DNA of 64,000 nt from Chlorokybus atmophyticus (Eukaryota > Plantae > Mesostigma and Chlorokybus algae): NCBI GenBank assembly GCA_009103225.1, contig RHPI01001259.1:62001-126000 (forward strand), given 5' to 3'. Position numbers and translations under genes: made by a program. Positions 14,927 through 64,000 of this stretch are shown here, one piece after another (the first letter of the stretch is position 1; every line of letters starts with the position of its first letter). Below the pieces are notes generated by a model. It was not told the origin of the DNA, did not search any database, and saw only the letters and a list, made by a program, of their open reading frames with translations.

Positions 14927-14939
14927 CAATACAGCCAGC

Positions 14940-16471: not shown

Positions 16472-16688
<217 letters not shown>

Positions 16689-20084: not shown

Positions 20085-20152
20085 AATAGAAGAGTTTGAT
20101 CCTGGCTCAGAATGAACGCTAGCGACATGCTTAACACCTGCAAGTCGAACGT
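20085..20152 (+). rRNA. 5' fragment of mitochondrial SSU rRNA (non-functional, within the NUMT)
   Basis: AGAGTTTGATCCTGGCTCAGAATGAACGCTAGCGACATGCTTAACACCTGCAAGTCGAACG is the conserved bacterial/organellar SSU 5' end. The rest of the gene is absent. Confidence 0.8.
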
Positions 20153-20609
20153 TACTAGAAAAGGGTGGCTTGTAACAGGGGGCTCCTTCCAATAAATTAC
20201 CTTCTAATTCAATCGAAATAAGTTATCTATCGATTATGCGCGGTGCGGTGGGTTGGATTAAAGGGGTAATCTTTTGATAAAAGAGCGAAGCCGATTTCTT
20301 TAAGGGAAATCGACCGGAGTGCGCTGCGCCTCTAATCAACCGGCTGTTCCGCACTGCGCCTCACTGCAGCAGATTGGGTATCTGTTGCTGCTTATATTTA
20401 TGCTTATGCTTAGAGTTCTATTTTTTCAAGTAATCTAGACTCTTTTAAGCAGAATGCCTTATAATCCCATATAGTGGGTTTTGAATGATGCTCTTTTTTG
20501 GCACCGCAGGATGCCTGTGTAAATAGTAGCTTTGCTAAAGAAAAGAAGCAGACCTAAACAGCGATCGCTGCAACCACAATATTGTAATTAAGAGAAAATA
20601 AACAGCAAA

Positions 20610-21330: not shown

Positions 21331-22102
21331 CACCAAGCGGTGATGGTTTGCTCTTACTGGGTCCGCACTGCGCCTTAGACTACACAGCAGCGACCACAGC
21401 TAATCAATTAATTGCACTGGTCTGCGATTGAAGGCGACCTACCCGATTAACAGCTGCTGTAATCGACCGAATTGCACCTGCATCCCGCTTCACCCTTCCT
21501 CACGCCACGCCGGTTTCTGTAAGTGATAGCCGTTCTTTTTAATATTTATTAACAGAACTCAAGTATTAAACTTCTATTAAAGCTAGTTGCTGCTCGCCTT
21601 TATATATTCGTTTGTTTAAGAGTAATTTTTTTTTTTATTCTTTACAATAATACAACAATACTTTGCATTTATTGCCCTTTTTATCTCATTAAAGAGCAGG
21701 CGCAGTGCGGTCGACTAAGTAGATATTGTAAGTAAGCTTAGGGAGTTAAGTAAAATAAAGTGCATATTGAGAGTACAGTATAATGCTGATTTTTCATGAA
21801 TGTGCACCTTATGATGCAGCATAACCCAGTCGATGCATTGCTTTTGATTTGCGCTAAAGAGTAGTTTAACATTGGGCAATGGTTTTAGATTATGTAATAA
21901 TCGATTTCGATTACAGGCGCAGTGCGGTCTATTAAGGCGCAGTGCAAATCGATTACTAATCAATTTCAATTGGGGTAATTTAATTAATTACCCCACTCCA
22001 TGAAAAAAAACCCCATTAATCCAACTGATTACCCCTAATCGACCCCAAATCAATTAGATTGCCGAGCGCTGGATTTCGTCCACCATCTGAAGACGGGATC
22101 GG

Positions 22103-26507: not shown

Positions 26508-29063
26508 ATGGAGAGCTGGAGGCGGAGGCGGAGGCGACGGTGGGGGGAGGGGCGGCCTGGGATGTCATTGGTGTTGGGGTTGGTGGTCGTTGGGTTGTTG
26601 TTGGCTCTGGAAGGGGCGGAGGGGCAGTCCACATCCTCCGCCGACGCCGGATCCGGCAACTTCTTTGGCATGGAGACCAGGGCCTTTGGTGATGAAATGA
26701 GGCAAGAACGACCACGTTGCAATTTTTGAATCCATTATGTATTGCTTCTGAGTTGTATTGGGTTTTACTTATGATAGTTTTAGTATTACACAACTCAACA
26801 TCACTAATAAGACACGCTACCGGTAGTGCTTGTTGGGCAGGCTGCATTAACACATTCATCCTGCTACTGTCTAGGCTACACAATGGGAAGCACAACAACA
26901 ATCACCACTGAGTACTTCTACACGCTGCTAGCAGGACATGATTGACTGTTAGACACTGCGAAAGCATCATCACACCATCTTCATACATACACAAACTCAA
27001 CACGTAGCAGTGTATCAGCCAAGCACACAGTCACTCCTCCACAGATGCATCATTGCCACCACCATCACTAGCACCAAACACACCACAACAACAACATAAA
27101 CAGCTCCACACAGAGCCTTCGTGATGAATCTGGGTGGTGACGGTACGGAGCGTGTGGACATGACTCCCGAGGGCATCCAGCCTCGTCAGTCTCATCTCGG
27201 TCCCGTTCCCTTCTCCTCCGTGCCGTACGCCTTCTCGTCGCTCAACTACATCACCGGGATGCTCTACACGTACGTGCCGTCCGAACGGGACGACGCGGAC
27301 CCACTCGCCAATCCGTTCCATGTCGTGGAGCTGCTGACGGGAAACCAGGTGGGTGTGTGTGTTTGCGTGTGTGTGTGCACGTGTGTTGGCACTTATACAT
27401 GAGTGCACATGCACTGTGTGTGGCTGGTGTGTGTGCGTACATGCATGCACGCATGTTCTATGTGGGTATGGAGTGTGGGTTTGGGGCGCATGCATGCACA
27501 CGCATTCACGTGTGCGGGCTCGTGTGCACACAGGCGCACACGCACAAGCGCACACACTCATTCGCACCCAACCACCAAGTCACACACACACGTGCAGACA
27601 CGCGAACGCAGGCACAAGCACACAACACACGCACACACTCACACGCAAGCACGCACGCGCACGCACGCACGCACGCACGCACGCCACCACACAACACACA
27701 TACCACTTGTTTCATCCCCTCAGGTCGACGCTCCTCTCCTCCCTTACGCCCCTTTCTGTCTCGAATACGACCTCCTCAGCGAGTCCCTTCTCGCCATCGT
27801 CGCCGGCGCCGACCCGCGCGACTCCACTTGGCTCAGTCTCGTGGCTTTCAATCTCACAACTGGTGAAGTGATGGGCCCGCAATACACATACGAGGGGTAC
27901 ACAACATTGGCATACGGGGCAGCCACGTTCGATTTTCTCAACCAGACCTTCTGGGCGATATTGAGTAATCCGGCGGAGTCAACAGCGTACCCGACACGAC
28001 TGTTTGGAGTGCAGAGATACACGAAGGACTTTACCATACAGTACATCCCTGTGCCAGGTTTGGACACAACAGACATGCATGAGCACATGTGGCTGTGCGT
28101 GCATGTGTGTGCATGACTGTTGTAACCTCACCGTGTGTACCAACACGTGAATCCACACGCACACGCACGCACACACGCACGCATAAGTGCATGCATAGCA
28201 CATGTGCATGCGCTAAAAGCCACACACGCACATCTCTTCAGGTAGCAAAGACCTTCGCGTCTCCAGCTACGACGTCGTGTTAGGCAGCGTGGTTTGGCGA
28301 TACGACTGGCCTTTACAGATCCAACAAATCACCGGCATGAAGTTTGCTCCCGCACCCGAAGCTCAGGACTCGCGCGGCGTGTACACGCCGGGGGACCCCG
28401 CGCTGAAGACCATCCACGTTGTGGCGCACGTCAAGAGCGCGGGGAGTAGTATACTCAACTCACTCTGCTGGACAAAGCCGTGTAGTTCTAGTATCAATAC
28501 ATCCGATGCGCCAACGTACACGTTGGAGCAAAGGATGTGTACGTGTCGAGCCGCAGTGGTCATGTTGGATATCGACTACACGTCCACATACACGCAGCCG
28601 CAAACACTCAACTTCGAGGTGATGCGATATCTGGACGATCTGTCGTTACTCAAGCCGTCGTCACGAATATCGGCTCTGCTCTCGGCGAATTCGGCTCAGT
28701 CGGATATCAATCCCGGCAAGTTGTTTTTTCTTGACGGGGCGCCCGATGCGTATCCAACAAATGCACTCGTGCTCGACACGTTTGGGACGGGGGGGCAGAC
28801 GGCACAACTGCCAAACACACCCAACATTATACAGCCGGGAAGCGGGGCGTATCAGATGGTGGAGAGGAATCCCGTGCAGACGGGGTATTTGGAGCAACTG
28901 TACTTCACGGGACAGTACCCGGAAGCCATCAGGTGGGTGGGACTGTGGGTGGGAACACATGTGTGTGTGTGTGTGTGTGCGCGCGCGCGCATGCATGTGT
29001 AAGTGTGCGTACAAGCATGTGGGGTGTTCACTCACGTGCGTGTGTGCATGCGTGCTCTTGTTC

Positions 29064-29095
<32 letters not shown>

Positions 29096-32000
29096 TCCTG
29101 CGCGTGCGCACACATGCGCATGTATCATGTGCAGTTGTTGTTGCGTTGCTCATGGTCATCATGTGTGCTCATCTCTGCAGGCCGCTGGCTGCGAAGATTT
29201 ACCCGATGCCCACATTCGCATCCAAGTCGTACATGGAGGGCAACGGCGTCGTGCGCGGAGTTGGCACGCTGTTGGTACATTGTCATTTGCGCCATGCATG
29301 AGCGAGAAACAATGCCAAACAACAAGCAACACACAACACAACGTGCATCATGTTGGCAGGCTACTGCGGGCGACTCCACGTCACTCATAACCATCGTCGC
29401 CGTTAACGTCTTCGGCATGACCCAACCCCCGAGCGCAGCCACGGCAAGCATGAAACAGCGTATACATCATTCCAAAAAACATGTCGCGCACGCATGACAC
29501 ACACACCTACACATACGCGCAAGCGTGCATGCACGTGCGCGCGCACAAACCCACATGCGCACATGCACGCGCACGCATCCGAGAACAGACGCGCGCGCGC
29601 ACCCACACACACACGCACGCACGCGCACCCACCCACCACCAACTCCTTGTGTCAAGCAGGACAACTTCACCGTCACCATCACGGGTCCCGGTTTCCCCCC
29701 CAACAACGTCGCCTCTTTCCCCGTCGGCCCCTCCCTCTTAGGTCCCGTTGGCCCCGACAACTTCTCCCCCTCCGACAACGTGCTCCCCCACACCGACCAA
29801 CAAACACAATACCGTTACGTGGTCGGCCCAACATACATTAGCTCTAGTGCGGGGAGGTACATGGCCAGTTTCAGTGTGGATGCGGCGGGGAATTACAGCG
29901 TGGAGGTCACGAGTAAGGGGGCGTTGCCGGGGGTAGCGGTCGGGGCGGCGGTGTACGGGAGCCCGTATAAGATGGTGGTAGGGGCGGGACCGGCGGCGGC
30001 ACAGTACAGCACGGCGGTCATTGTGAGTTGTGTGTGTGTGTATATGTGTGTGTGCGTGTGTGTTGTGGGGGGACACGTATCAATGATATTATCACCTCAG
30101 GAACATGCTAAGACACAGCATGTTCCTGAGGTGTAGGCATGTTGTGTGTATGCACGCGTGGCCACGCGATGCGTGAGCTTGTTGGGATGCGTACGTAACG
30201 TGTGTACACGTTGAGGCGTGTACACATTTTATGGGCACCTGTCAACATTCTCCGCTCGCGCTTTGGGTTGTGTCGCACGTGTTGAGCCCACCTGTCAACA
30301 CATCTTCCTAACATGTGGTGTGTTTTGTGTGGCAGTACGACGGTGCCGGCAACGCTGTGTTGTTGACCTCAGCCGGGGCCACCTACACGCCCTTCTCCGC
30401 AAGCTACTGGTCCGGTGATGGCGTGGCGGTCGCCAGTGTGAACCGCGCGAACAAGTATGTGGACATCCTCGGGAACAACAACCCGAGCGCCGAGCAGTAC
30501 AGCGACATCGTGTATGCCGCCAACGACAAGGCTGATGCTGATGTTGGCATTGCGGCCTCAACTGCCAGCAGCATCAGCTTCAACGGTAAAGTTGTTGTGG
30601 TGTTGAGCGTGTGTGCTACATGACGTCTGTGCACACGCACACGTGTGCGCGCGTGCGCGCGTGCGTGTCTGCGTATTTGTACTTGTGCTCACACACACAC
30701 ACATCCCTCATCCCGCGCAGCCAGCGTTGGCCGCGTGTCCACTTTCTACATCGAATCCCGCGACCAGTTCGGCAATCGTCGTTCTTCCGGCGGCGACCCT
30801 TTATCCATCACCATCAAGGGCGTGACCTACATCTCTTGTTCTCTCCCGTTGGACCCGACCCAACCCAACTCGCGCACGCAGCCGCAGGGACAGACGCCGT
30901 ACTGTGAAATCAGTGATGAGGGAACGGGGAGGTATAGCGTGAGGTTTTTCATTACCAAGAGGAGCTTCACGCAACCCGTGTATCTGGTGACGCCGACGAT
31001 GTATAATCAGCCGATGTATGGGAACCCGCCGTACCCGCTGTTTGTGAATCAGGTAGGTTGTTGTGCTCGTTAATGATGATGACGATATTGTTGTTGTGTT
31101 GATACAACAACCACAAGTGGTGGTGGTTGTTGTAGCACCACAACAAGTTGTCGTTGCTGTTGTTGTTGTTGTTGATGGTGATGATGATGACAATATTGTT
31201 GCTGTGGTGATACAACAACCACAACAAGTTCTCCTTCAGGGTGTTACCGAGCCCGGTCTCTGCGTCGCCGTAGGCGACGGTTTATCCTCTTGCATCTCCG
31301 GCGTGTTGTCCATCTTCACAATCCAAGCTCAGGACCAGTTTGGCAACAAGAACTCCCTCGGCGGCGACCCACTCTATGTTGAAGTCACCGACAGCACGGG
31401 GACACGCGCCAACAGCGGGTCCACTATAAGTGCCGGTGCAGACGAGGTGCAGAGTATACTACAAGTGATACAACTTGGCGGGGGGCCACAGGCTTTACCC
31501 AATATTGGCACAACGCGTAGGCGTGTGTTGTTGGGTTTGACACAACAACAACAACAACCCAACATGGCGATTGGTGCCCGCGTGTATGATACAAACGATG
31601 GGAAGTACACGGTGATCTACTGGATGTCTGTTGTTGGTCAGGGTGTAATCAATACCACGATCAACAATCAGCCTATTGCGGGGTCTCCTTTCCATGTTGT
31701 TGTGGTCCCGTCCCACACGGACCCGCAGAATTGCGTGGCTTACGGGCCCGGCACGCGCGGCGCGTTCACGGCGGGGACACAGTTGCAAAGCGTCACGCTG
31801 CAGTTGCGTGATAGTGCGGGGAACAACATGAGCCAGGCGGAAGCCATATATGCGGCCACGCCGCCCGCGTTGCTCGTGGCGTTCACCATGCCCGTGAGGG
31901 TGAGTGCGTGTGGGTTGTTGTGTTGAAAATGTGAGTGGTGGTGTTGGGTTGTGGGCTTGATGTTGGGTGATGTGTGATGAGTATAGGTGATTGTGGATCC

Positions 32001-35000
32001 GGCGGGCGTGCCACACACGATCACGGATGGACCCATATCGCCGCTGTACAACCTCAACACAGGGGTGAGATGACGTGTATTACAGATTGCTGTACTCGTC
32101 TTGTCGCAATGCATGACACATGCGCACACGTGCACGCATACGAGCGCATAGTAGCATACACACATGAACGCGCATATGCACACACGGTTGCACACACAGG
32201 CTCTCTCACACGCGCTTGCACAAGCACTTGTGCACACCCGCACAAGCGCATGCGCGCGCACACGCACACACACGCGCATGCAGTTGCTTGCGAGTGCACA
32301 CACCCACCCACACACAACTCATGCTGACACGTTGCACACGACAGAGCGTGAGCCTCCCCACCACCGTCACCAACCTCCCTTCCGACAAGGGCAAGTTCCT
32401 CATCTCCTACTCCACGCCTCTCGCGGGCGCATACTCTCTCTCTGTCCAACTCCTTCGACGCACCGACAGCCAGCTGCAGTTCATACGGTTCGTGTGTTGG
32501 TTGTGCGAGAACACAACAACACAACAAGTTGTTGTTGTTGACATGTGGTGCATGCATCAGAGGTGCGGATGGACTCTATGGAAGCAATGGCCCGGGCAAC
32601 TCGCCGTTCGTAGTGACTGTGCTGCCAGCAGACTTCAGCGTGGCACAAACTTCCGTGAGAGACACGCACACATGCATGCACACTCACACATGAACACGCA
32701 GTCAGCATGCACGCACACATAAACACATGCATGCGCACGCGCGCGCGCACATCTCACTCGCGTGTGCACGCAGATGTACGCGTGGCACCTTAGTGATAGC
32801 GGTTACGTCCTCCTGTCCACATCGCAAGGTGTGACACACGCCCTCGCGGACGCCGAGGGCATCATCGACATCGTGCCTCTCACCTCTCTATCCGCCAACG
32901 TGGGCGATCAAGGCAGCTTCTTCATCCAACGCAGAGACAAAGTACAAAAGTTAGCGCCATTCTGTTGGTTATGTTGGTTTGTTGTGTCGGGTGACCCAAC
33001 ATGTTGATGTGTGTATGTGTGTATGATGTGCTTTTCCCGTCACACGCAGTTCTCCAACCTTCTCACTGATGCGGGCAACGCTTCCTTTGCGGTGTCGATG
33101 TCGGCGATGGTTAACAGACAGCTTGTGACGATCATCCCCACGGTCACGTATGTGGTTGGCAGCGGGGCGTACAAGGTGGCGTACATCGTGCAGGCGGTAA
33201 GTTGCTGGTGAGAGCTGGGTTGTGTGGTGGATGTGTTGATGTGGGGTCTGATTTGTGTTATGAACGTGCAGGCGGGTGTGTACAAAGTGCGTATCACGTT
33301 TGGAAGCCAGCAACTTCTGGATGGCAATGGCAATCCATACAACCTGACAGTGAGTTACTCTGTGTGTGTGTGCGTGCGTGCACGCGTGTGCACACACGTC
33401 CGTGTTATGTTTGTGAGCCACATACGAATGTGTGTATGCAACGCGATCTCACACACGCATGCAACACAGGTTACTCCTGGCGCGACTTGGGCTGGCTCAG
33501 TCACGTCCTTCGGCCCCGGTTTGCGTGGTGGCGTGATCAACAAGGAGTCTTCTTTCACCATCGTTGCTCGCGATCGCTACGGCAACCCTCAGGGCGACAC
33601 GCAGTCTGGCGACACGCAAAAACAAGAAGCCCTCCTTTACGACGTGCAGCTACTGTTGTGTCAGGACGGCACGCCCTCTTCGTGCACACCCGGGAGTGAT
33701 ATCTACGGGACCGTCACGCCCGATATCACCACGCCAGGACAGTATATCGCCAAGTTTGTACCAACGATCCCCGACACGACGTATCTGATGTGGTTGAGGT
33801 ACGATAATCAGCTCGTGCAAGGGTTGACAGACACGGGAAGCACGTTTCCGATCAGCGTGCAGTTTTTGTCAACACTCGGGGCGGCACAAGAGGCCAACAC
33901 TGTAGTGGACCCGCCGTACTATGGTATGTTGTTGCCTTCAACTAGTAGTTTGCGTGCTCACGCACGCACATGCGCACAACTTGTGTGTGTGAGAATGTGC
34001 GTCACATGTGCGCGCAGGCACGCGCGCACGTACGTGCGTGTGTGCGTGCACGTGCGTGTCTGTGTACATGCGCTTCTGTCTTGTTGTTGTTGGGCGCATT
34101 AACATACCATTTGGGCAGGTGGGACTGTTGGTGAGGCTCAATTGATAACCGTGCGTGCGCGTAACCGGCAGAATATGGACCTGGAAGACGGAGGTATGTG
34201 CACATATGATGCACATGTGCGCATATGTTGGGTTATGCGAGGTCATGTGGTAATGTGTGTACATATACCGACACAGGGTCTTTGGAGGAGCTCAACGTGC
34301 AGATGCAGCTGTTGCAAGACGGTGTGGAGACATTCAAAGTCCCGACAGACGGCTCGTGGCTGTCTCTCGCAAGTGGTGATGTTGTCGACGGTGCGGATGG
34401 CACGTACCTCATCACCTTCCCGCCATATGTGGACGCCAACACCAGCACACTTAAGTCCCTCACCGTAGCCGGCACGTATCGCGTGTCGATCACCGCACGA
34501 TCACCCACCCACTCTACTGCAATCAACATCGGCACGGCCTCCAAGACCGCATCAACACCTTTTGATGTGGTGTTGGCTCCCGACACAACTTCCGCAACAA
34601 CTTCCGAGCTTGTGGAAGGTCTCAAACCCAGCCAATCACTGGTCCCGGGACAGGCGTTGACTGGCATCGCGGGTGACCTGAGGACCTTCTGGGTCCGGGG
34701 TCGGGATCGGTTTGGGAACGCTCAGACTTGGGACGTGTTTCAGGGCGCCGATAACTTTAGTGTGCTTGTTGTGTCGGAGGTGGTGGGCAACGTGTCCACG
34801 TTTGCGCTGCCTGTGACGGATAACCGCGACGGCACGTACCAGGCGCAGTGCGTGCTCACGCAGGCTGGGGTGTATAACGTCAACGCGTGGCTGCTACCAA
34901 GCGGGGAAACAACACCACTTGCGTTGCTGTCGCAACCCGTCACCGTGACTATCACACCTGGTAAGGCTTGTGTGTGTGCGTGTGCGTGTGTGGGTGTGTG

Positions 35001-41000: not shown

Positions 41001-44000
41001 CACAGAACTCTTCGCGCCGTACAACACCGTGCCAGGCGGGTACTTTCCGCTTATAGTTGTCGCGGGCCCAACATACGCTTACACGTCTGAAGCGACGGGT
41101 GCCGGCTTGATCGGTACAGATGCGGGTGAACCCACACTTATTACAGTGAGAGCGAGAGACAAGTTCCTCAACAACAAGCTTGTTGGCGGGGACGCGTTTG
41201 TGGCAACGTTTGTTGGACCCGTTGGCGTGTATGTTGTGTCGAGTGAAGACAACGGGGACGGGTCTTATGCGATAGTGTACACGCTACCCGTGACGGGGTT
41301 GTACAACTTGTCGATAACGGATGGAGTGGGTGTTAATGTGGCCAACAGTCCCTTCGCACAGAGCGTGAGAGTGTCTCCCGCGGGGATATCACTCAATAGT
41401 ACGCTTGTTGTTGTGTCGAGCGCGCCCGTGACTGCGGGACAGAGCGTCACGTTGGGTGTGAACCTGGTGGACACGTTCGGCAACCCTGTCGAGGATGGAG
41501 ATAAAGTGAACTTTGGTGTTGTTGTGTCGGCAAGCGCCAACAGGCGTGTGACCCCACGCCAAGTGTTGGCTTCGGGCTCTTCTTTGCTCCAGCAACAGAC
41601 TTTTTCCAACAACAACGCGAGTAGTAACGGCGCACTCCCAACATATGTTGGGTACAACCTCACGTACGTCGCGAGTTGGGGTGTCGTTCACGCCGTCAGC
41701 ATGACTTATCACGGGCGACACATTGCTGGGAGTCCCATGATGTTGTCCGTGACGGCGGGTCCAACAAGTGCCAACAAGACCTACGCGACGGGTCTCGGCG
41801 TAACCCGCGGGATTGTCAATACGTTGGGTTCGTTGCGCATACGTGCTGTGGACGCGTACGGCAACGCGCGTCCCAACGGCGGGGACACATTTGTTGTTAC
41901 ACTTCTACAACCTGATGGGAAGGACCTACGCGCGGACGTGTATGATCTTGGCAATGGCGTGTACGTGGCCAACTACACGTACACGCAGCGGGGAAACCAC
42001 ACGATACTCATCAACCTCATGCTGCCCGTGCTCACGCCAGCGGGGTTTTACATCAAGCAAGCGTATGCTATAGCGGGAAGCCCGTACCGCGCCAACGTGA
42101 TACGTGTACTCGACAACAACATGACACCCACTGCCAACTACACATACGCGTACGGGGATGGCCTCAACTATGCCATCGCGGGGGTGAGAACAACATTCTT
42201 CGTGCAAAGTGTGGCTCAATCCGTCACAGCTGAGGTCCTCAACAACAACGGGGTGCTCGACACAACAATTATGAACAACGTATCTTTGACTATCGGCGGC
42301 TTCTCCACTCACTTCTCCGCATCGATCCGCCTCAACAACAACAACAACATCATGTTGGACGCAAATGTGTCGGACAACAAAGACGGCTCCTACTCTATCT
42401 CCTACCAAACCAACATGAGTGGTTGGTACGGTGTTGTTGTGTTGTACGAAGGTGTTGCTATGAAAGGGAGTCCTTTCTCCCTCTTTGTTTTCGCGGCCGA
42501 CACATCCATCGACACGTCCACATTGACCCACATGTCCAATGCTATGGCGGGCGTGACCCAACATGTTGGCGTGAAGTCCAAAGACGCGTACGGCAACGCC
42601 CAATCGGGATCGAAAAGTGTACCCGCAAAGACATTCCAACTTGTGGATGATAGTTGGGAGGCATATGTGACATATGTGCAAGGCACTGTGCTGAGCAAAC
42701 AGGCGCAAAAGGACCTGAGTGGGTCTGTTGTGATGACCAACGCACAGGACGGGACCTTTACGTTGGGTTTCTTACCCACGGTGACCGGGTTGTACAGCGT
42801 GTCGGTTACGTTGGCGCGAACACCCGCGGCAACATACACAACCAATGTCGTGGCAGCCAACATAGCTGCTCAATACACTATACTGTTGGGTGAGAACGAT
42901 GCGAGTATGGAAGACGCGTTTCACGCCGCACGCGCGTTGCAAGTGTTTGCATTGGTTGTGGCCGCATACGATGCGTATGGCAATAAGATTAATGTTGGGG
43001 GTGAGGGTGGCCGCGTGTACGTGCAGTACCAGAGCGCAGACGTGCCGGACGTGATGTATACCAACATTACCGACACCAACAACGGCAACTACAGCGCCTC
43101 ATTCACGGTGGAGAGCACCGGCGTGTACACGCTGAGCGCGTACGTCAACAACGTCCTCGTGACCAATGGCAACCCGCTGGCAACTTACACGGCGAGAGGT
43201 GCCATCGCAACCGTGGCAACGGATCCCAACATGTGCAAGATTGTTGGGTCTTCTGCCACGTCTGGCGTGGCGGGAACACCCGCCACGTTCCACATACAGG
43301 CCAGAGACTCGGTGGACCGCATCAACGCGGGTGGCGGGGACGTGTACAAAGTGGTGATATCCCCACAACAACCCACCAACGAGTATGGCATTGTGCTAAA
43401 GACATACGAGTACATTGCGCTGGACGTGGCTCAAGGCAACACGACGCAAGGCTTGTATCGAGTCGACTACACTATAGCCGACTTCGGCTCCTACACCGTG
43501 AGCGTGTATCTCCACACGTCCACATACATATTGTTGTCCGCAACCCCACTTGACCTTCTTGTTGGTAAGGCTGCTGCACCCGCCTCGTGCATCGCCCTCA
43601 CGCCTCCTTGCACCAACGAGGCCATCTTCACCGACAGTGCCGTCGGCATCACCCTCACCTTCAACACTCCCACCGACCGCGCGGGTTTCAACGGCGTGGA
43701 GTCTTGCGCCAACCTGTTCGACGCCGCGTCGATGTTGTTCTTGGGGAAGGGGCCGCTGTGTAGTTGGGTCACGGATACCGTCGTGCAGGTGGCGGTCGGG
43801 TACGGGGCAACGATACAAGAGTTGTGGCAACTTGTGTTCTTGCCAGATGCGATATTGACAAAGCAAAGGAATTCGGGGTACCTGGCGGGGTCGGTCAGCG
43901 TGGAGAGGCCAGTCAATCCGCCACACCCTACTGCAGTTGTGCAGGTGAGAGGTGGTTGATGTCTGCCTTTGGTTTTATGACAACTACTCTTCCTGCGAAC

Positions 44001-47000
44001 AGATAGCTTATTTCCTACATGCGCGCATACTCATACTCATACGCATGCACGTGCACACACACACACACACATGCGCACACACAGGCAGGTGTGCGCGCTC
44101 GCACGCACATACACATGCAGGCATCTGCATGTGAGCGTTCGTGGGACGGACATAACCACACGCCCGCACGCATGTTATGCAGGCACATGCACACGTACAA
44201 GCGCTCACTTGCGCGCACACGCATGCACACACCCATCCACCCACCCAAACACATTCCAGGCCCCCACTACTCTCGGTTCCTGCGACGACTTCACGTTGGA
44301 CGCCTCCGGCTCCTACGGCACCGCGGGTCGCGCTTTGTCCTACGCTTACGGCGTTCGTCCCAACGTCCCCAACGAGCCCGCCATCTCCCGCTTCTTATCC
44401 GACACGCCCACATCCTCCTCCTCCGTCACATTACCCTCACAACTCCTCGCCGTCGACACAACATACACCTTCATGTTGTCCGTGCAGAACTTCCTCGGGG
44501 AAAGTGGGTTGGTGTATCACAGCGTGGTGAGGAGGGATTACCCGCTACCTAATGTGATCATCGAGGGACCCGCCGTACAACGTGTGTATAGGAGTCAAGA
44601 CGTGCGTGTTTATGCGACTGTGGCTCTATCGGCGTGTTTTGACTCGGCTCCAGATATGTTGTTTGTGTGGACTTTGGCTTCGGGGTCGCCTTTCTTCGAG
44701 TTGGACGAGCAGACGAGTAAGACACGCACACTCTTCATCCCCGCCAACACGTTGTCGGCCGGGTTGACCTATGGACTGACCATCCATGGTGAAGTTGTGT
44801 CGGACCCGACGCGCCTATACAACGAGGCTACTGCGTTGGTGGTTGTGCTCGTGTCGCCGATAGTTGTCAACGTGCAGGCCGCGATGGTTGTGTCGGCGGG
44901 TGATGTGGTCATGTTGGATGCATCTACATCAAACGATCCCGATGACCAAAACCCAACGTATCCCGTCCCGCCTTTCGGCCCGTTCTTCTTCAAGTGGGCG
45001 TGTGTGCGTGCCAACGATAGTGGCCCGTGCTTCGTGGACACGTTGGGGTTGTTGTATCCAGACCCGTTGGAGAATGTACTCACGTTGGCACCCGGCACGT
45101 TGCCAGCCGGGTCGGATTATTTGTTTACTATCACAGCGAGTAAAGAGCCACTCTATGACGGGAATGGCCCCATACCTGGACGCACGCAAAATGTCGTGAA
45201 GAGGATCACGTGAGTGCGTGTATGTGCGCGCGCGCGTGCGTGTGCATGCGTGTGCACGTGTATGCATGTGTGTGTGTGTACGTGTGTGTGTGCTTGTGTC
45301 GCATACCAACATGTTGTTATTATTGTGATGTGTGCAGTGTGTTGGGACCCGAGCAGCTTCAGTCCAACCGGAGGCGGCGGCTGCTGCAGGCGACATCCAA
45401 TGTGGTTCCCGTCGTGTGGATCGACCCCGTTGCACCAATCGTCAACGCTAACGATCGCCTCGCAATACGGGTGAGCGTGTGTTTGTAATTGAGGCAGAGG
45501 CAGATAGGGTGTGTGACTATCGGTTGCATGTACACAAGCACACCTGCACACACTCGCAAGCACCCATATTACAGATGATATTACTGATGGCCTGACTCAC
45601 TAACTTGTGCAAAAGGGTGGCATCATGAACGATACCGTCTACGGCGCGAGGACAACCTACTACTGGGAGGTTGTATCTGGCCGTCTCGACCTCGACTCCT
45701 ACCCTTTCAAGGTTGCCACTCTCCGCAACAACTCCCACTTAGTCATCCTTCCCGGCGCGCTTTCAGCAGGACAGACCTACTTGCTGCGTCTGAACGCGAC
45801 GAATGAAGACTCGGGACTCACGGGGTATAACGAAGTGGGGTTCGTGGCCAATGGGGCACCCACGTCGGGAGTGTGCGCGGCCACGCCGCTTGTGGGGTTT
45901 GCGAGTCAGACGACGTTCACGCTAGCGTGCTCGGTAGGACTCTGCTCCCCTGCTTGCGTGCATGTGTGTACGTGTGCGCGCGTTCGCTCATGTGCACGTG
46001 CACGTGTTGTTGTACGTGTGCATCCCTGTATGTGTGTGCACATGTGTGCGTGCATGTGTGCCTGGTCATGTGCGCATGCTCGTGCGTGTGCATGTGCGTG
46101 TGTTGTCAGGTGATGATAGCGATTTGTGTGTTTCAGGCTTGGGAGGACGACGACAACCAGGCCGTTCAGTACGAGTGGCGCTACACCGACCCCACCTACA
46201 ACTGGGAGATCCCTCTCGTCCCCCGCTCCAAGACCAACCAAGCATCCGTCAAGCTCCCTCCCGTCACCGTGAGCAACAACTCCTACACACTCACCCTCGT
46301 CGCTTACATCGTAGATAGATTCGACGCCAAGTCACGAGTAGAACTCAACGTGACAGCATACATGCCAACACTGTCGAGCAACAACAACAACAACGACACA
46401 GACACATTCAGCGTCACAGACTATGTGGAGAACCTCCTCACATCCAATGACTCCCTCCCTTACGCCCTCGGCACAGGCAACATCATCCAGATAGTCAACA
46501 TAGCCAAGTCCTCTTCACGTCTCCACAACTTGGCTGCTTCACAACGTGCTTCACGCCCCCAACGTGTTGCTCCCGCGGGTGCGCCTCTCACTCCTCAAGA
46601 AGAAGCGCAGGCGAGACAGGATGAAGAGGACGTGGCGAATGCGTGTCGGCACGCGGGAGTGATGTTGGGAGCCTTGCAGAGGGTGATTGATAGCTTGAGA
46701 ATGAGTGGCGTGGAGATGAGTCTGGTGGGGGATGCGTATAGAGAAGCGGCGGCGATGGGGGAGTGCTACTCGGTGAATGATACGGACAACACGCAGAGAG
46801 CGGTGAGTGTAGATAGTGTGCGCGTGGGTGTTGTTCACGCACACGCACGCGTATGCACTGATGCTGGACATGAGTGGGCACTTGTGGACTTGAGCAAGTC
46901 ACGAGTGTGCTCCAACTTCAGTGTGCGCGTGCATGTGCGCGTGCGCATGTGTGCATGCGTGCGTGTGCGTGTGCGCCTGGGGCACGCCCGCATGTGTGTA

Positions 47001-47381
47001 TGCATACAACACTCATTATTGTCCCCATGCAGGCCGCTGCCGTCAGCCAGCTTGCTTTGAATGCCGCTAGCATGGGTTCCCCCGAGCCCCTGGCCTCCCA
47101 ATCCCTCCTCGACGCCGCCTCCTCCCTCTCCACCTCCTCCTCCTCCTCCTCCTCCTCCTCCTCCAACTCCAACTCCACTTCCCACACCGTTCAGACCATC
47201 GTCCAGAACTTAGCATTAGCGGGGACGAAGATGTCCGTGCCGGGAGAGACGCCCTTCAGCGTGGCGAGCAAAGGACTGCAGTTGTCGGCGAAAGTGGTGG
47301 TGGGGGACCCCGCGGGAGAAGTGGTGTTGCCATCTGTGCCGGGTTCGGGCCAGGACTCGGCACCAACCGTGCAGGTGAGAG

Positions 47382-47419
<38 letters not shown>

Positions 47420-50400
47420 GCTGTGGTGGTGGTAGTGACATGGTTGTTGGTTGGCTTGGTTGAAGCGATGTGTTCTGTTTCAGGTTCCGGCTGGTACTGT
47501 GCCGTCCAACGGATCGGAGATGCAGGTGAGAGATGCATGCTTCTGTCGTGGTGTTGGGAGTGTCTTTGCGTGGAAGGAGCGTGTGTTGTGCTAGCGTGAA
47601 TGTTGATGTGGTGGTGTTGGTGCAGGTTATTGCTGCGGTTAGTAATAGCAACCCGTACGCGGGCAGCAACGACTCCACGCCCATCACGGGTGGCGTGCTC
47701 ACCTTCAACATGCGCGCCAAAGGTACACTTGGGGAGCATGTGCACCCTCAACCACATGCATACCATACGATATACGCTTCAACTCATGTTCACCCACACA
47801 CACGCAGGCGCTGACACCAACCTCGAGGTATCCAACCTCACCACCCCAATTCAAATCCGCATCCCCGTTAGCGTTGGCGGCACGTCTTGTCGCTCCACCC
47901 GCGGAGGTTGTCGTTACTGGGATGAGAATGTTGGCTCCTGGTCCACATCCGGTCTGCGCGAGTTGTATCGCACCAAGGACTACGTGATATGTGAGACGGT
48001 CCACCTCACGTCGTTCGGCGTGTCGGCCGATGACTTGGTCCCGCAGTTCAACGTGATTAACCCGATTGGACAAGCGGACCTGTTCACGCAGATTAGTCTG
48101 AGTAATAGCCTGGCGTTCTTTGTATTAGGGGGGATTTATGCCACGTTTGCCGTGGCAAATTGGTTGGGGTATAGGAAGGATAGGAGAGATAGACTAAGAG
48201 CACGCCTTGAGGATAAACTCGGGACACTTGACTACAGATTGAAACAGGAGGACGACAAGAAGGTGAGTGTGTTTGTGCGTGTGTGCGCGTGTGTGTATGT
48301 GTGCGTGTGCACGCGCGCACACGCACACACACGCGCGCTTGTGTATCTGTGTGCGTGCGTGTGTGCTCGACACAGCTTTCAACCTGTTATCCCTTTTTGT
48401 TTATGTGTAGGTTCAGGACAACAACACCATCACTAAGGAGGGTCTTGCGAAGCCCGCCAAGGCCGTCAACGGTGTTGACATGAAGAAGGGTGACGACCCT
48501 CCCTCCACCCTCGCGGGTAAGATCGGTCTCGCCCTCATGTCCGAGCACGCCGTCGGTACAATCATGAGCGTGAAGCCGACCGACAAGTACACGCGTCCCC
48601 AGCGTCTGATGGTGTTGATGTGTCTCGTGTTGGGACACATCGCCACCACGGCGGTGTTCTTCGGCATCAACCCGAGCAACATCGCGGCCAAAGTGATAGT
48701 GGGCATCGCCGCCGCGATGCTCATGCTACCGAGCAAAGTGGTACTGCAGTTCGTGTTCCAAAAGTCAACGTATGTGGCCCCACCTATGAAGACCAAAGCA
48801 CGAACCAACATACGACGATCGCACCGACACCGACACGACAACAACGTGTCCAACATGTCCATGACCAGCATGTCCAACACGAACGGGCACAACAATGGAG
48901 AGGAAGTTGAACAAAATGGCCACAAGAAGCAATGGCCTGTTCTTCATTCCATTGCCGACGTTGCCGACCATTTGTTACACAACAACAACAGCAAGCCGGC
49001 GACGCCGATGTTGGGTGATGCGGGTGATGGCGTGGGGTCGGGTGATGTGGCTGAGAATGGTGTGATGGATGTAAAGTTGAGCTTCAATGAAGAAGGCGTG
49101 CCGCTACCACCGACGGCACCGACATTGCTGAGACCGCAGAGAGCGTCGAGGTTCTCGCGAATGAGCACCATCGCCACAGGCCCGCAAGCAGGTAAGTGCA
49201 CACTGGAACACGTCTACACTCTCACACTCACACTCACACTCACACTCACACTCACACTCACACTCATGCACGCGCACGCGCACGTGTGCACACACGTGCA
49301 CATACACGCAGACACTCTCATGCACAGGTACATGCACGTGCACATGCACGTGCACGTGCACACGTGCGCACATACGCATGCGTGTCACTCAAGCGTGGTT
49401 GTCCACACGTGACCTTGTGCGTATACATGGGCATGTGCGCACGTGCGTGTGTTCACGCACGCACGCACGCACGCGTTGATATGTATACATAACACAATGA
49501 TACTTGTGTCACTAGCTGGCCTCGTCCCCCCTCCCCTGCCTCCCAAACCCCCGACCCCTCCCGCTCCTTCCTCCGGCGGCGTCCCACCGCGCATCCGTCC
49601 CCGCCGACGCGTCAGCAACAAGGTCACCGTCATCGCCGCCGCGCCTGTGCTCGACGTCCTGGGCGCGCCCAAAGACATCCTACCGCCATTCGCTGCTGCG
49701 GCGGGGGGAGGCGGTGCGACGGCACTGTTCCCGGTGCCACCACCGCCACCACCGGAGGTGTGTGCGTGTGACTGTGTGTGTCCGTGCGCGTGCATGCATG
49801 AGAGCGTACGTGCGTGCGTCTCTGTCTGCGCGCGCGTGGCATCGTGCTCACACTGGATGTGTGCGCGTGCGTCCTTGCATCTGCAAGCCACACAGCTCCA
49901 TTTATGTAGAGCCCCCCCTGTTACCCAACATCATCAACGCTGCAACAACCGTCGTGTGCAGGGTGCTCCCACTCGCCCTCGCCGCTTGCGTCCCGCCCCT
50001 CCCGCCCAAGCCTCCAGCCGTTTGCTCTCCATGGTGCAGTCGGCGCAGCAGGCGTTCGGTCTTGCGTTACCAACATTGACACCGTTTGCGCCGCTCCCGC
50101 CACCTCCCGCGGACGCGCCGCCACCAGCGAGACCAGCCATGAGTAAAGCGAGGAGAGCCATGCTGATGGCGTCGAGGAGTAACTCGGTGAGTGCGCTTGG
50201 TATGCGCACGTGAGTGTGCATGGGTGCTTGCACATTGATGTCTGTGTGTGCATGTTGTCACGGGCATGCGTGTGCGTGTGCACACCATACAGATACACGC
50301 ACTTGTGCGCACATGCACTTGTACGCACGTGTTTGTACAGTTGCACTTGCACAACGTGTGCAACCATCCAACTGACGATAGTTCTCACCACATGTGCAGC

Positions 50401-51623
50401 GTATAGCACCGGACCCGTTCCTCACTACAGCGTGGGCCAACGTGTCCCCTTCATCCAACAAGTTGGCCACACAACCACCTCCTCCCCCACCCCCTCCCCC
50501 ACCTAGCAACGGCATCATGCGTCCACGCCGTAGACGACCGGAAAGCCTACAACCCAGCACGCAAACAAGCACAACATCCACCCCGCGCGCACACACGCCC
50601 ACAAGTGAATCAGGAGGTAGCGAGTACGCCGTTGCTTTCGCGCAGGCCGCAGCGAGGCTTCGTCGTCCAACAACAAAGCGTGGTAGCGCAGCCACATTGT
50701 TCGCACGCCAACAGAACATCACCAACATGGTGATGCGCGAGCACGGGTTGAGCGAGTCCACACTCCCTTCGCGCTCCGGCACCCCATCCAACATGTTGTT
50801 CGATAGGAGTGAGACGCCACTCTACATACCCTCGGCGATAGAGAACGTTGTGCGTCGGATACAACGTGTGTGGAGAAGACACCTACTCGTGCGTGCACGC
50901 CACCAACGCAAATCTGCCACGCGGATACAAGCAGCCGTGCGTGGGTTTCTTGCACGCAAACACGTGAAAGAGGAGAGAGAGGCTCTCGCTAAAGGAAGAC
51001 CCGTGTTGGGTTTGTGGTGGATGTCCGCACACGAACACCGCAGTGAGGTGAAGAGTGCGGGAAGTTCCAACAACAACTCACGTGCGCCCACCCCGGCACA
51101 ACATTACCTCGACGCCCTCGCTGCTAAGGAAGAAGTGCTCTCACGTTGGGCGCAGAGGGCAAAGGCTGCTGCCTCACAGACACACGAAGCACACATCCAC
51201 GCAGCTGAGACAGCAAACGAACCCTTTGCCGAGCGTAAGAGGGCGGGAGGAGCAGGTGGATGTGTGCGTGCAACACGACAACAACAACAGCGTGACAACG
51301 CTAAGAGACGACGCAAGCGCCAGGGCCTCCCACGTTGGTTCGTGTACTTCGCGTACGCGGGTGCGTTGGGTTTCTGCGCACTATGCTCCTACTTCATCAT
51401 GTTGTACGGGCTCGTGTTCGAGCCCAGCGTGGCACGCGCGTGGCTGCTATCGGCACTTCTATCACTTGTGTTGGAAATGTTTCTACAAGACCCGGCGAAG
51501 ATAGCCGCACTCGCGCTACTGAAAGACCACTTCAAGGCGTGGTTACATGGAGTCAAAGATAGGAAGAATGCCAAGAGGAGGAATAAGTATCGCGTGCATG
51601 CCACGGGAGCACTGGCGGGATGA
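26508..51623 (+). CDS. Giant polycystin-1/REJ-like type I membrane protein: signal peptide, ~25 filamin-type Ig repeats, REJ-type region, GPS motif, 5 TM helices, Pro-rich loop with IQ motifs (dozens of exons)
   Basis: Signal peptide MSLVLGLVVVGLLLALEGAEG (ATG at 26508 or 26562). Recurring filamin signatures include (Q/T)ARD.(Y/F)GN, D..DG.Y and GSPF. The REJ-like segment runs about 43600-46500 (CDDFTLDASGSYG, VVMLDASTSNDPDD, YWEVVSG, APTSGVC). The GPS motif is at 47909-48016, TMs are at about 48108, 48600, 48690, 51330 and 51450, and the stop is at 51621-51623. Exons are joined by GT-AG introns. Confidence 0.88.
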
Positions 51624-53884: not shown

Positions 53885-54135
53885 GGCCCCCAACAACAAC
53901 AACACCGACAACGTCAATCACGTCGACAATCTGAAAGCACTCAGCCGACAATGCCGGTGACGTAACTTTTAAAGGACAGCAGTGACGTCATTGATTACTA
54001 GGAATACGTTACTGTGTTCTTTTGTCGTAATTAGGGTTTGGCGGGAAAGTTTGGGGTGTGCGTGCGGGTGTGGGCGGCGGCGGTGGCGGCGGTGGGCGAG
54101 GCTTCTGCATTGCTGCGAGGCGGCATGTGGGGCGC
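53885..54135. promoter_or_regulatory. Compact bidirectional promoter between LOG and URT1
   Basis: The divergent ATGs are only 251 bp apart. The interval contains TGACGTAA (53958), TGACGTCA (53983-53990) and a telo-box TTAGGGTTT (54031-54039). Confidence 0.6.

Positions 54136-60419: not shown

Positions 60420-64000
<3,581 letters not shown>

What the first reader, a model, noticed from the sequence alone, without database searches (positions are those of the whole stretch)
26508..51623. Giant filamin-repeat polycystin-1-like adhesion receptor
One ~25 kb gene encodes, in order: a signal peptide, an unassigned beta-rich N-terminal region, about 25 filamin-type Ig repeats (hand count 24-26), a Cys-containing pre-REJ/REJ region, a GPS motif and polycystin-1-type TM helices. 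Filamin repeats are classically cytoplasmic rods, but here they sit between a signal peptide and the first TM, so they should be extracellular. The inferred protein is several thousand residues long and could form a long surface stalk on a self-cleaving receptor, perhaps for mechanosensing, adhesion or flagellar signalling. I know of no characterised protein with this architecture in green algae, but I cannot confirm novelty without a search.
Basis: partly seen in the sequence, partly recalled or inferred. Interest (0 to 1): 0.85.

Follow-up and report, generated by a model that had tools for sequence, protein, structure and literature searches.

The report
Giant algal polycystin-1-like surface receptor
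This alga has one roughly 25 kb gene for a protein of about 6,200-6,300 residues: a long outward rod of 26 antibody-like repeats on a membrane anchor related to the receptor half of the human kidney-disease protein polycystin-1, and uncharacterised relatives exist in many other protists.

Summary
On the + strand, from ATG 26508 to TGA 51623, about 40 exons encode in order:
- a signal peptide and an unassigned head of about 450 residues;
- 26 filamin-type Ig repeats;
- a REJ module and a GPS motif with the H-L-T triad;
- five TM helices whose TM2-3 and TM4-5 hairpins match human polycystin-1;
- a Pro-rich cytoplasmic loop with two tandem IQ motifs.

There is no PLAT domain and no channel half (TM6-11); the protein ends after TM5.

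The one-gene reading rests on full-length collinear relatives in Mesostigma, Pedinophyceae, Rhodelphis and metagenomes. In Mesostigma, 23 of the 26 repeats pair with the same-numbered repeat here.

Extracellular filamin-type repeats have a precedent in GEX2/FUS1. Self-cleavage is plausible but unproven, because one of the two GPS disulfides is missing.

I found no paper on this architecture; its database relatives are all "hypothetical".

Verdict: a new variant of the PKD1/REJ receptor kind. It is probably a mechanosensing or adhesion receptor with calmodulin input. First readers of this scan noted similar giants on other pieces of this genome (unchecked).

The parts
26508..51623 (+). Whole coding span of the gene, ATG to TGA. 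About 38-41 exons and about 6,200-6,330 aa. Exon boundaries are predicted, not RNA-verified.
   Evidence: Own splice-aware dynamic-programming models. Collinear tblastn of Mesostigma P0013 from 27130 to 51620.
26508..26688 (+). Exon 1: start codon and signal peptide (hydrophobic core at 26562-26618). Donor G|GTGATG.
   Evidence: Sequence read directly; hydropathy 2.28. Signal-peptide-like N-termini also in Mesostigma P0159 and Pedinophyceae P0009.
27104..29274 (+). Exons 2-5: N-terminal head of about 450 aa, fold unassigned. Conserved at 35-58% identity with Mesostigma.
   Evidence: Exon pieces tile the Mesostigma N-terminus and confirm the junctions. No Pfam, NCBIfam or PDB match. The AF2 model failed, pLDDT 37. 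Weak beta-propeller lead only.
29181..43527 (+). Array of 26 filamin-type Ig repeats spread over about 23-25 exons. The largest exon, 40850-43944, carries the last 8-9 repeats.
   Evidence: Pfam PF00630. Iterated HMM counts 25-26 repeats. 23 of 26 repeats best match the same-numbered Mesostigma repeat.
44089..46454 (+). Pre-REJ and REJ module. Pfam REJ pieces at 44614-45147, 45655-45933 and 46125-46454. The exon may begin at 44089 or at 44260; homology favours 44260.
   Evidence: Pfam PF02010, E 1.2e-20, 1e-12 and 8e-6. tblastn of P0013 and P0009 resumes at 44257-44260.
46023..46064 (.). They lie in a predicted intron (45934-46109).
   Evidence: intron placement.
47033..48022 (+). GAIN-like region ending in the GPS motif (47909-48022). 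The H-L-T triad is at 48002-48010, with the expected scissile bond between 48007 and 48008. GPS cysteines 1 and 3 are present; 2 and 4 are absent.
   Evidence: Pfam GPS, E 2e-8. Profile hits to adhesion-GPCR GPS motifs, E 5e-11. Alignment A1. Disulfide pairing from PMC3321182. The low-confidence AF2 model has helices followed by a beta sandwich; its top Foldseek hits are GAIN domains, but with E > 0.03.
48110..48169 (+). TM1, followed by the basic stretch YRKDRRDRLRARLEDK (48170-48217). This places the downstream loop in the cytoplasm.
   Evidence: Hydropathy and motif coordinates; the R.D..DR motif is conserved across the family.
48588..48758 (+). Conserved YTRPQRL motif, then TM2 (48606-48665) and TM3 (48693-48758).
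   Evidence: Profile A1, positions 167-261, matches polycystin-1 chain 6a70_B residues 226-333, E 1.5e-9; coordinates.
48759..51335 (+). Long Pro-rich cytoplasmic TM3-TM4 loop of about 600 aa, interrupted by about 3 introns. It contains two tandem IQ motifs at 50847-50906 and 50916-50975.
   Evidence: Pfam IQ PF00612, E 2.3e-7. Sequences VVRRIQRVWRRHLL and ATRIQAAVRGFLARK. 12.9% Pro and 1 Cys. IQ is also found in the Mesostigma and Pedinophyceae relatives.
51336..51485 (+). TM4 (51336-51419) and TM5 (51438-51485) hairpin.
   Evidence: Profile A2 matches polycystin-1 chain 6a70_B residues 529-597, E 5.7e-5; coordinates.
51486..51623 (+). Short basic C-terminal tail of 45 aa and the TGA stop (51621-51623). 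No further TM helices and no channel half.
   Evidence: Sequence. The Mesostigma and Pedinophyceae alignments end at the same place. The next strong coding signal starts at 54.0 kb and has no Pfam family.

Best explanation
What it is. A single intact gene for a type-I-oriented, five-pass surface receptor of the polycystin-1/REJ kind. From the outside in, the protein has:
- a conserved head of unknown fold;
- a rod of 26 filamin-type Ig repeats. By analogy with the roughly 80 nm, 24-repeat filamin A monomer (established knowledge), the rod would be about 90-100 nm long;
- a REJ module and a GAIN/GPS domain next to the membrane;
- the five-helix N-terminal membrane domain of polycystin-1 (TM1-5);
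- a cytoplasmic Pro-rich loop of about 600 aa with two IQ motifs, which are calmodulin-binding sites.

[quoted passage not shown] So it is the receptor half of a polycystin-1 without the channel half.

How it most likely works (inferred, not shown). The head binds an external partner: wall or scale material, the substrate, or another cell. Load is carried along the fixed-length Ig rod to the GAIN/GPS domain. If the protein is cleaved at HL|T, the stalk peptide TSFGV... could then act on the 5-TM bundle, as in polycystin-1 and adhesion GPCRs. The cytoplasmic loop would couple this to Ca2+/calmodulin and to proline-binding partners.

Shown: the sequence, the domain order, homology of the parts, conservation of the whole architecture, and the topology indicators.
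Inferred: cleavage, the ligand, force transmission, calmodulin binding and the downstream signal.
For: Domain content and order.

One continuous gene:
- Collinear alignment of whole relatives to the locus, and exon-by-exon tiling of the Mesostigma N-terminus.
- 26 repeats here and 26 in Mesostigma, with 23 of 26 best matches at the same position. Median score to the positional partner is 143.5, against 80.5 for the best paralogous repeat inside the window. This argues for selection on a fixed, position-specific rod.

PKD1-type membrane domain. The family ends after TM5.

Topology: signal peptide, basic stretch after TM1, and 79 Cys in the ectodomain against 1 in the loop.

H-L-(T/S) is kept in all three green-lineage relatives, and H and L in nearly all of the 19 aligned family members.

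IQ motifs are conserved in Mesostigma and Pedinophyceae.

Transcription. Two runs of the same organism labelled 'RNA?' hold 0.65 and 0.58 of the sampled words of 42500-48400. The exonic share of that stretch is about 0.74-0.82 in my models (my own arithmetic), and a DNA run would be expected to hold about 1.0 (my expectation).
Against:
- GPS cysteines 2 and 4 are absent. In latrophilin they form one of the two disulfides that hold the cleavage turn (PMC3321182), so autoproteolysis may be weak or absent.
- TM6-11 and the coiled coil are the parts through which animal PKD1 joins PKD2 (established knowledge). They are missing here, so a polycystin-2 partnership cannot be assumed.
- The AF2 models were of low confidence (pLDDT 37 and 52), and the fold matches to GAIN and PKD1 were not significant.
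- There are no expression, localisation or binding data for any member of this family.
Confidence: 0.6

Rival explanations
1. A passive structural tether rather than a signalling receptor. The 26-repeat rod anchors extracellular material (body or flagellar scales, wall or mucilage, hair-like appendages) at a fixed distance from the membrane. The REJ/GAIN/5-TM part serves only as an anchor.
For: Repeat number and repeat identity are conserved position by position between this alga and Mesostigma, as expected for a ruler or spacer. Relatives occur in scaly or flagellate protists: Mesostigma, Pedinophyceae, Rhodelphis, Picozoa and cryptophytes. A filamin-like protein co-purified with scale-associated proteins of Scherffelia (PMC4494055).
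Against: A plain anchor would not need the conserved 5-TM bundle, the H-L-T triad or the tandem IQ motifs, all of which are kept in distant relatives. The Scherffelia protein has no TM segment or signal peptide and is a different protein.
Confidence: 0.2
2. A gamete or zoospore recognition receptor. It would work like sea-urchin sperm REJ proteins or plant GEX2 and algal FUS1, mediating species-specific cell-cell adhesion before fusion.
For: REJ proteins act in fertilisation in sea urchins, and a REJ-GPS protein is a male-gamete candidate in Ectocarpus (PMC1934368 and PMC4700764). The filamin-type repeats give matches to the Pfam GEX2 N-terminal Ig family (for the whole protein E 7.3e-10, but no single stretch passes on its own). 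GEX2 and FUS1 are gamete adhesion proteins.
Against: Recognition proteins usually evolve fast and change repeat content, whereas this array is conserved one-to-one across a very deep split. To my knowledge (not tested here), sexual reproduction has not been described in Chlorokybus or Mesostigma. GEX2 and FUS1 are single-pass and lack REJ and GPS.
Confidence: 0.12
3. The locus is two or more adjacent genes, for example a secreted filamin-repeat protein followed by a shorter REJ-GPS-5TM receptor, read together because they share a strand.
For: No reads could be laid. The junction at 43.9-44.3 kb has two possible acceptors and a stretch of weak coding signal. In a marine metagenome, gene callers split the homologous locus into several genes.
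Against: The exon that carries the last filamin repeats runs on for about 140 codons. Together with the next exon it aligns without a gap to Mesostigma residues 4307 and 4309. Whole proteins with both parts are predicted independently in at least five organisms or assemblies. No start codon with a signal peptide precedes REJ. The metagenome splitting comes from a caller that ignores introns (my inference from the same-strand run of adjacent fragment genes).
Confidence: 0.06

Closest known systems
Polycystin-1 (PKD1) and the PKD1-like proteins of animals (PKD1L1-3, PKDREJ, LOV-1)
   Same: A large ectodomain with an array of Ig-like repeats, then a REJ module, then a GPS motif with HL|T next to TM1. 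The TM2-3 and TM4-5 hairpins are homologous (E 1.5e-9 and 5.7e-5 against 6A70). There is a long cytoplasmic loop between TM3 and TM4.
   Different: - The Ig repeats are filamin-type (PF00630), not PKD-type.
- No LRR, WSC or lectin head.
- No PLAT after TM1.
- No TM6-11 channel-like half and no C-terminal coiled coil; the protein stops 45 residues after TM5.
- One GPS disulfide is missing.
- Tandem IQ motifs sit in the TM3-TM4 loop.
Sea-urchin receptor-for-egg-jelly proteins (SpREJ1-10)
   Same: Members of the PKD1 family with REJ and GPS and a variable number of TM segments (1-11). Truncated, non-channel versions therefore have a precedent (PMC1934368).
   Different: SpREJ ectodomains carry C-type lectin and PKD repeats, not filamin repeats, and half of them have PLAT. 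None is described there with a 26-repeat filamin rod or an IQ loop.
GEX2 (land plants) and FUS1 (Chlamydomonas) gamete adhesion proteins
   Same: Filamin-type or invasin-type Ig repeats outside the cell on a membrane protein of the green lineage. The window repeats give matches to Pfam Ig_GEX2_N and Invasin_D3.
   Different: GEX2 and FUS1 are single-pass, much shorter, and have no REJ, no GPS and no polycystin-type TM bundle.
Adhesion GPCRs (latrophilin, BAI, GPR110 and others)
   Same: A GPS motif within a GAIN-type region directly before TM1, and the stalk sequence T-S-F after the cleavage site. The profile hits their GPS motifs at E 5e-11.
   Different: The membrane part here has five helices homologous to PKD1, not a seven-helix secretin-like bundle.
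Uncharacterised full-length relatives: Mesostigma viride Mv02023, Pedinophyceae sp. YPF-701 CAG9463240.1, Rhodelphis marinus m.14781, EukProt gene561-957_t, and metagenome proteins P0033, P0016 and P0054
   Same: The same order of parts (signal peptide, filamin array of 21-43 repeats, REJ, GPS, five TM, IQ) and a collinear alignment over the whole length at 25-50% identity.
   Different: All are annotated only as hypothetical or unnamed. The Pedinophyceae protein and a marine picoeukaryote locus carry a PLAT domain after TM3, which the window gene and Mesostigma lack. Repeat numbers differ outside the Mesostigma/window pair.

Membership tests
PKD1 / polycystin-1 family | REJ module in the ectodomain | tested here: met
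   Pfam PF02010 in three consecutive exons, together covering profile positions 1-443 of 452; E 1.2e-20, 1e-12 and 8e-6.
PKD1 / polycystin-1 family | GPS motif with the H-L-T/S cleavage triad directly before TM1 | tested here: met
   Pfam PF01825, E 2e-8...CETVHLTSFGV at 47909-48022, with TM1 29 residues after the motif.
PKD1 / polycystin-1 family | Both conserved GPS disulfides (C1-C3 and C2-C4) that hold the cleavage turn | tested here: not met
   C2 is replaced by Leu and C4 by Thr in the window, Mesostigma and Pedinophyceae proteins. Pairing taken from PMC3321182.
PKD1 / polycystin-1 family | Autoproteolysis at the GPS actually occurs | not testable with these tools
   Needs a protein blot of tagged N- and C-terminal fragments.
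PKD1 / polycystin-1 family | PLAT/LH2 domain in the first cytoplasmic loop | tested here: not met
   No PF01477 hit in any exon. The TM1-TM2 loop is only about 95 aa. PLAT is present in the Pedinophyceae relative, but after TM3.
PKD1 / polycystin-1 family | N-terminal membrane domain TM1-5 homologous to PKD1 | tested here: met
   Family profiles against PDB sequences: 6a70_B residues 226-333, E 1.5e-9 (TM2-3), and 529-597, E 5.7e-5 (TM4-5).
PKD1 / polycystin-1 family | Channel-like TM6-11 (PKD_channel / TRPP-like half), giving 11 TM in total | tested here: not met
   Stop codon 45 residues after TM5. No further hydrophobic helices and no PKD_channel hit. The relatives end in the same way.
Filamin (actin cross-linking) family | N-terminal calponin-homology actin-binding domain and a cytoplasmic location | tested here: not met
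   No CH domain in any exon. The repeats lie between a signal peptide and TM1.
Filamin (actin cross-linking) family | Tandem filamin/ABP280 Ig repeats | tested here: met
   PF00630 in most open frames scanned between 30.6 and 43.9 kb; 25-26 repeats by iterated HMM.
Adhesion GPCR | Seven-helix secretin-like membrane domain after the GAIN domain | tested here: not met
   Five helices. The TM2-3 and TM4-5 parts of the profiles match PKD1; the only adhesion-GPCR matches cover the GPS part, at most up to the first helix.
GEX2 / FUS1 gamete adhesion proteins | Single-pass membrane protein whose ectodomain is only filamin/invasin-type Ig repeats | tested here: not met
   Ig_GEX2_N gives a whole-protein match (E 7.3e-10) with no stretch passing on its own. 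The protein also has REJ, GPS and five TM helices.

The most novel reading that the evidence does not exclude
The REJ-GAIN-5TM unit is an ancient, self-sufficient receptor found across eukaryotes: green algae, Rhodelphis, Picozoa, cryptophytes, oomycetes and Amoebozoa. On this reading, animal polycystin-1 arose when such a receptor fused to a TRPP channel subunit. In the earliest-branching streptophytes the unit carries a fixed-length, roughly 100 nm ruler of 26 individually conserved Ig repeats and a calmodulin-binding loop. It would then act as a channel-independent mechanosensor of the cell surface, or of the flagellar surface of zoospores.
Probability: 0.3. Interest if true: 0.75.

Novelty: new variant of a known kind. 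Interest (0 to 1): 0.55.

Why it matters
Polycystin-1 is the main human polycystic kidney disease protein. What its N-terminal five-helix domain does, and where the protein came from, are still poorly understood. This gene, with relatives across distant protists, shows that REJ, GPS and TM1-5 exist in nature as a complete protein without PLAT and without the channel half. That gives a simpler system in which to ask what the receptor half does on its own, and it bears on the idea that PKD1 is a receptor-channel fusion.

For plant evolution, it adds a very large, deeply conserved surface receptor to the earliest-branching streptophyte algae. Among the hits whose source organism I could look up I saw no land-plant member, but I did not search for one. 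The one-to-one conservation of 26 repeats between two lineages that split very long ago suggests that the length and the order of the rod are themselves functional.

Tried and rejected
2. Fold of the N-terminal head. All of these gave nothing: Pfam, NCBIfam, a PDB profile search, a word-index search for stand-alone homologues, and AF2 with a 7-row alignment (pLDDT 37). The ESM Atlas gave only a weak beta-propeller lead, score 0.75, which I do not rely on.
3. AF2 of GAIN plus TM1-3 from the Mesostigma relative. pLDDT was 52. The top Foldseek hits were GAIN domains and PKD1, but none had E <= 0.001. I treat this as consistent, not as evidence.
4. Single-exon phmmer of the TM exons against PDB sequences found nothing; only family profiles reached PKD1.
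5. A PLAT search seeded with the Pedinophyceae PLAT found no other member among the fetched proteins.
6. The window's own annotated protein was not found in either protein library, so there is no independent annotation of this locus.
7. The first gene models translated intronic (GTT)n and (GT)n microsatellites into poly-Val runs at 31.06-31.17, 40.37-40.42 and 47.38-47.44 kb. These were rejected as artefacts after reading the DNA, for example the consensus donor at 47375.
8. An extension of the gene past 51623 through a GC donor was rejected, because all relatives end there.
Full report
OBSERVATION

The window is eukaryotic DNA of about 55% G+C in the region of the finding. On the + strand, open frames from about 27.1 to 51.6 kb carry a continuous three-periodic coding signal that changes frame at GT-AG boundaries.

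Pfam scans of these frames give:
- Filamin PF00630 in most open frames scanned between 30.6 and 43.9 kb, with E 1.3e-58 for the 1,106-codon frame 40639-43956;
- REJ PF02010 in three consecutive pieces, 44614-45147, 45655-45933 and 46125-46454, which together span profile positions 1-443 of 452;
- GPS PF01825 at 47909-48022;
- an IQ motif near 50.9 kb.

The ATG at 26508 opens a classical signal peptide: an Arg-rich n-region followed by LVLGLVVVGLLLAL. The frame closes at TGA 51621-51623, followed by A+T-richer non-coding sequence.

GENE MODEL

No gene predictor was available, so I wrote a splice-aware dynamic programme. It uses a periodic Markov coding score trained on the Pfam-positive exons, GT/GC-AG introns and frame bookkeeping. 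It was later guided by tblastn matches to relatives and by a microsatellite mask.

Depending on settings it gives 38-41 exons and 6,197-6,330 residues. The architecture does not change between settings, but individual borders do. Three poly-Val runs in early models were translated intronic (GTT)n or (GT)n repeats. At 47375, for example, a consensus donor cagGTGAGA precedes the repeat. The acceptor of the first REJ exon may be 44089 or 44260; homology favours 44260. Exon borders should be treated as approximate.

IS IT ONE GENE?

A phmmer search of the first REJ exon against 1.84 billion cluster representatives found 1,095 relatives, with 305 at E <= 1e-10. Among them are giants of 5,300-7,200 residues.

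Collinear relatives:
- Mesostigma viride Mv02023 (isoforms of 6,381-6,592 aa) and Pedinophyceae sp. YPF-701 CAG9463240.1 (6,545 aa) align collinearly with my model from its first 60-100 residues to the last ones.
- By tblastn, the Mesostigma protein walks along the window from 27130 to 51620 without rearrangement.
- A further collinear relative of 6,557 aa (EukProt gene561-957_t) carries Filamin, REJ, GPS and IQ by precomputed Pfam.
- Rhodelphis marinus (6,197 aa) and metagenome proteins such as P0033 (7,178 aa, 43 repeats) also have the filamin array, REJ and GPS-TM in one predicted protein.

Junction evidence:
- The window's N-terminal exons tile the Mesostigma N-terminus piece by piece, which confirms junctions 27348/27724, 28057/28242 and 28932/29181, and also the small GC-donor exon 29360-29443.
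- At the critical filamin-to-REJ junction, Mesostigma residue 4307 aligns to 43941 and residue 4309 to 44260.

Repeat-by-repeat conservation. An HMM iterated from one window repeat finds 26 repeats in the model and 26 in Mesostigma. In an all-against-all comparison, 23 of the 26 window repeats have the same-numbered Mesostigma repeat as their best match. The median score is 143.5, against 80.5 for the best paralogous repeat inside the window. The array is therefore old, and it is conserved in both number and order. That is hard to reconcile with a pseudogene or with a chance juxtaposition of genes.

Transcript evidence is thin. Two runs of the same organism labelled 'RNA?' hold 0.65 and 0.58 of the sampled 31-mers of 42500-48400. 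The exonic share of that stretch is about 0.74-0.82 in my models, which I computed by hand from the exon tables. Nothing was laid. Those places lie in a predicted intron (45934-46109).

THE MEMBRANE PART

After the GPS come five hydrophobic helices:
- TM1, 48110-48169;
- TM2, 48606-48665;
- TM3, 48693-48758;
- TM4, 51336-51419;
- TM5, 51438-51485.

Single exons found nothing among PDB sequences. Family profiles did:
- The GPS-TM1-3 profile (19 sequences) hits adhesion-GPCR GPS motifs (E 5e-11). With its TM2-3 part it hits polycystin-1 chain 6a70_B residues 226-333 (E 1.5e-9).
- The TM4-5 profile hits the same chain at residues 529-597 (E 5.7e-5).

From my memory of the 6A70 construct and UniProt P98161, these correspond to PKD1 TM2-3 and TM4-5; I did not verify that residue mapping here.

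The protein stops 45 residues after TM5, and the Mesostigma and Pedinophyceae proteins stop at the same place. None of six further family members scanned has a PKD_channel or PLAT hit after the GPS. The next strong coding signal downstream begins at 54.0 kb and has no Pfam family, and an SMC gene starts near 60.5 kb. So this is the N-terminal five-helix domain of polycystin-1 alone. That agrees with the scan's other note on this window (s1-171991).

There is no PLAT domain. The TM1-TM2 loop is only about 95 residues. The Pedinophyceae relative and a marine picoeukaryote locus do carry PLAT, but after TM3.

TOPOLOGY

Four indicators agree:
- the signal peptide;
- the stretch YRKDRRDRLRARLEDK directly after TM1 (positive-inside rule);
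- 79 Cys in the roughly 5,400-residue ectodomain, against 1 in the roughly 590-residue TM3-TM4 loop;
- IQ motifs in that loop.

Together they place the head, rod, REJ and GPS outside and the Pro-rich loop (12.9% Pro) inside. The loop holds two tandem IQ motifs, VVRRIQRVWRRHLL and ATRIQAAVRGFLARK, at 50847-50975. IQ motifs are also found in Mesostigma and Pedinophyceae.

GPS DETAIL

The triad H-L-T is present at 48002-48010, and H-L-(T/S) is kept in the green-lineage relatives. In Arac et al. 2012 the two GPS disulfides of latrophilin pair C801-C832 and C820-C834, that is C1-C3 and C2-C4, and they hold the cleavage turn (PMC3321182). The window, Mesostigma and Pedinophyceae proteins all have Leu in place of C2 and Thr in place of C4. 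This is a coordinated loss of one disulfide. Self-cleavage is therefore plausible but cannot be asserted.

An AF2 model of the Mesostigma GAIN-TM1-3 region shows helices followed by a beta sandwich, and its top Foldseek hits are GAIN domains and PKD1. However, pLDDT is 52 and no hit reaches E 0.001.

THE HEAD

Residues of about 60-490 (exons 2-5) are 35-58% identical to Mesostigma. They match no Pfam, NCBIfam or PDB sequence. No stand-alone homologue was found, and AF2 failed (pLDDT 37). A beta-propeller suggestion from the ESM Atlas is below its reliability range. The fold stays unknown.

DISTRIBUTION AND LITERATURE

Of the best 150 REJ hits, each representing a 50%-identity cluster, 27 carry at least 5 filamin-type repeats and 12 carry at least 15.

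Named sources include Mesostigma, Pedinophyceae, Rhodelphis, Picozoa, the cryptophytes Hanusia and Rhodomonas, the oomycetes Phytophthora and Lagenidium, and the amoebozoan Clastostelium. Many more come from marine metagenomes. All are annotated as hypothetical, unnamed, or by a generic domain name (for example 'GPS domain-containing protein').

Full-text searches found no paper describing a filamin-REJ-GPS protein in algae or protists. The relevant precedents are:
- extracellular filamin-type repeats in GEX2 and FUS1;
- a male-gamete REJ-GPS protein in Ectocarpus (PMC4700764);
- sea-urchin REJ proteins with 1-11 TM segments (PMC1934368);
- GAIN domains in Dictyostelium and Tetrahymena (PMC3321182);
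- a filamin-like protein co-purifying with scale-associated proteins in Scherffelia (PMC4494055).

Earlier follow-up notes of this scan name the genome as Chlorokybus. That fits Mesostigma being the most completely collinear relative, but I did not test it. First readers also noted several other giant filamin/REJ genes on other pieces of this genome. These notes are unchecked.

MECHANISM

Shown: the domain order, homology of the parts, conservation of the whole architecture, and the topology indicators.

Inferred:
- The head binds an external partner.
- The 26-repeat rod transmits load to the GAIN domain. From the known roughly 80 nm length of the 24-repeat filamin A monomer, it should be about 90-100 nm long.
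- The stalk TSFGV..., if released or exposed, acts on the 5-TM bundle as in polycystin-1 and adhesion GPCRs.
- The IQ and poly-Pro loop couples this to calmodulin and to proline-binding partners.

Because TM6-11 and the coiled coil are absent, pairing with a PKD2-type channel cannot be assumed.

Rivals:
- a passive fixed-length tether for scales or wall material;
- a gamete or zoospore recognition receptor;
- with low probability, two merged genes.

VERDICT

The gene is a new variant of the PKD1/REJ receptor kind. It is conserved but uncharacterised, and of moderate to good interest.

Noticed in passing
window 27350-27700, 28110-28240, 47384-47425 and many other introns of the gene: The introns are rich in (GT)n/(CA)n, (CACG)n and (GTT)n microsatellites. 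When read in frame they translate into poly-Val or Cys-Val runs, which mislead ab initio exon calling and hydropathy scans.
   Followed up: partly
window 60514-61200 (+), continuing downstream: The open frame carries an SMC_N / AAA_23 domain (E 4e-26), the start of an SMC-type ATPase gene downstream of the receptor.
   Followed up: no
window 7857-8369 (-) and 9988-10707 (-): Exons of a ribosomal protein L14e gene (E 2e-25) and of a flavin amine oxidase gene (E 1e-26), upstream on the other strand.
   Followed up: no
window 15035-15589 (+): An RNase H-like domain of a reverse transcriptase (E 6e-7). Probably a retrotransposon remnant between the housekeeping genes and the receptor.
   Followed up: no
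window 18000-22000 and 58000-60000: Two A+T-rich islands (G+C 0.39-0.40, against 0.55 around them) flank the receptor gene region at a distance. Their nature was not examined.
   Followed up: no
window 54031-55158 (+) overlapping 53972-54618 (-): Strong coding-potential score on both strands with no Pfam family. This could be a low-complexity or repeat-derived sequence, or an unknown gene.
   Followed up: partly
L001 and L002 (marine metagenome contigs), 322-17296: A compact picoeukaryote locus with the same architecture, called as a row of separate genes on one strand: a 3,137 aa filamin gene, a 1,367 aa filamin+REJ gene, and a 145 aa PLAT gene. It shows a PLAT-bearing version of the family in marine plankton.
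   Followed up: partly
Alignment A1, family-wide: Two short motifs are conserved across the protist REJ-GPS-5TM family: R-x-D-x-(R/K)-D-R just after TM1, and (F/Y)-T-R-P-Q-R-L just before TM2. Their roles are unknown.
   Followed up: no
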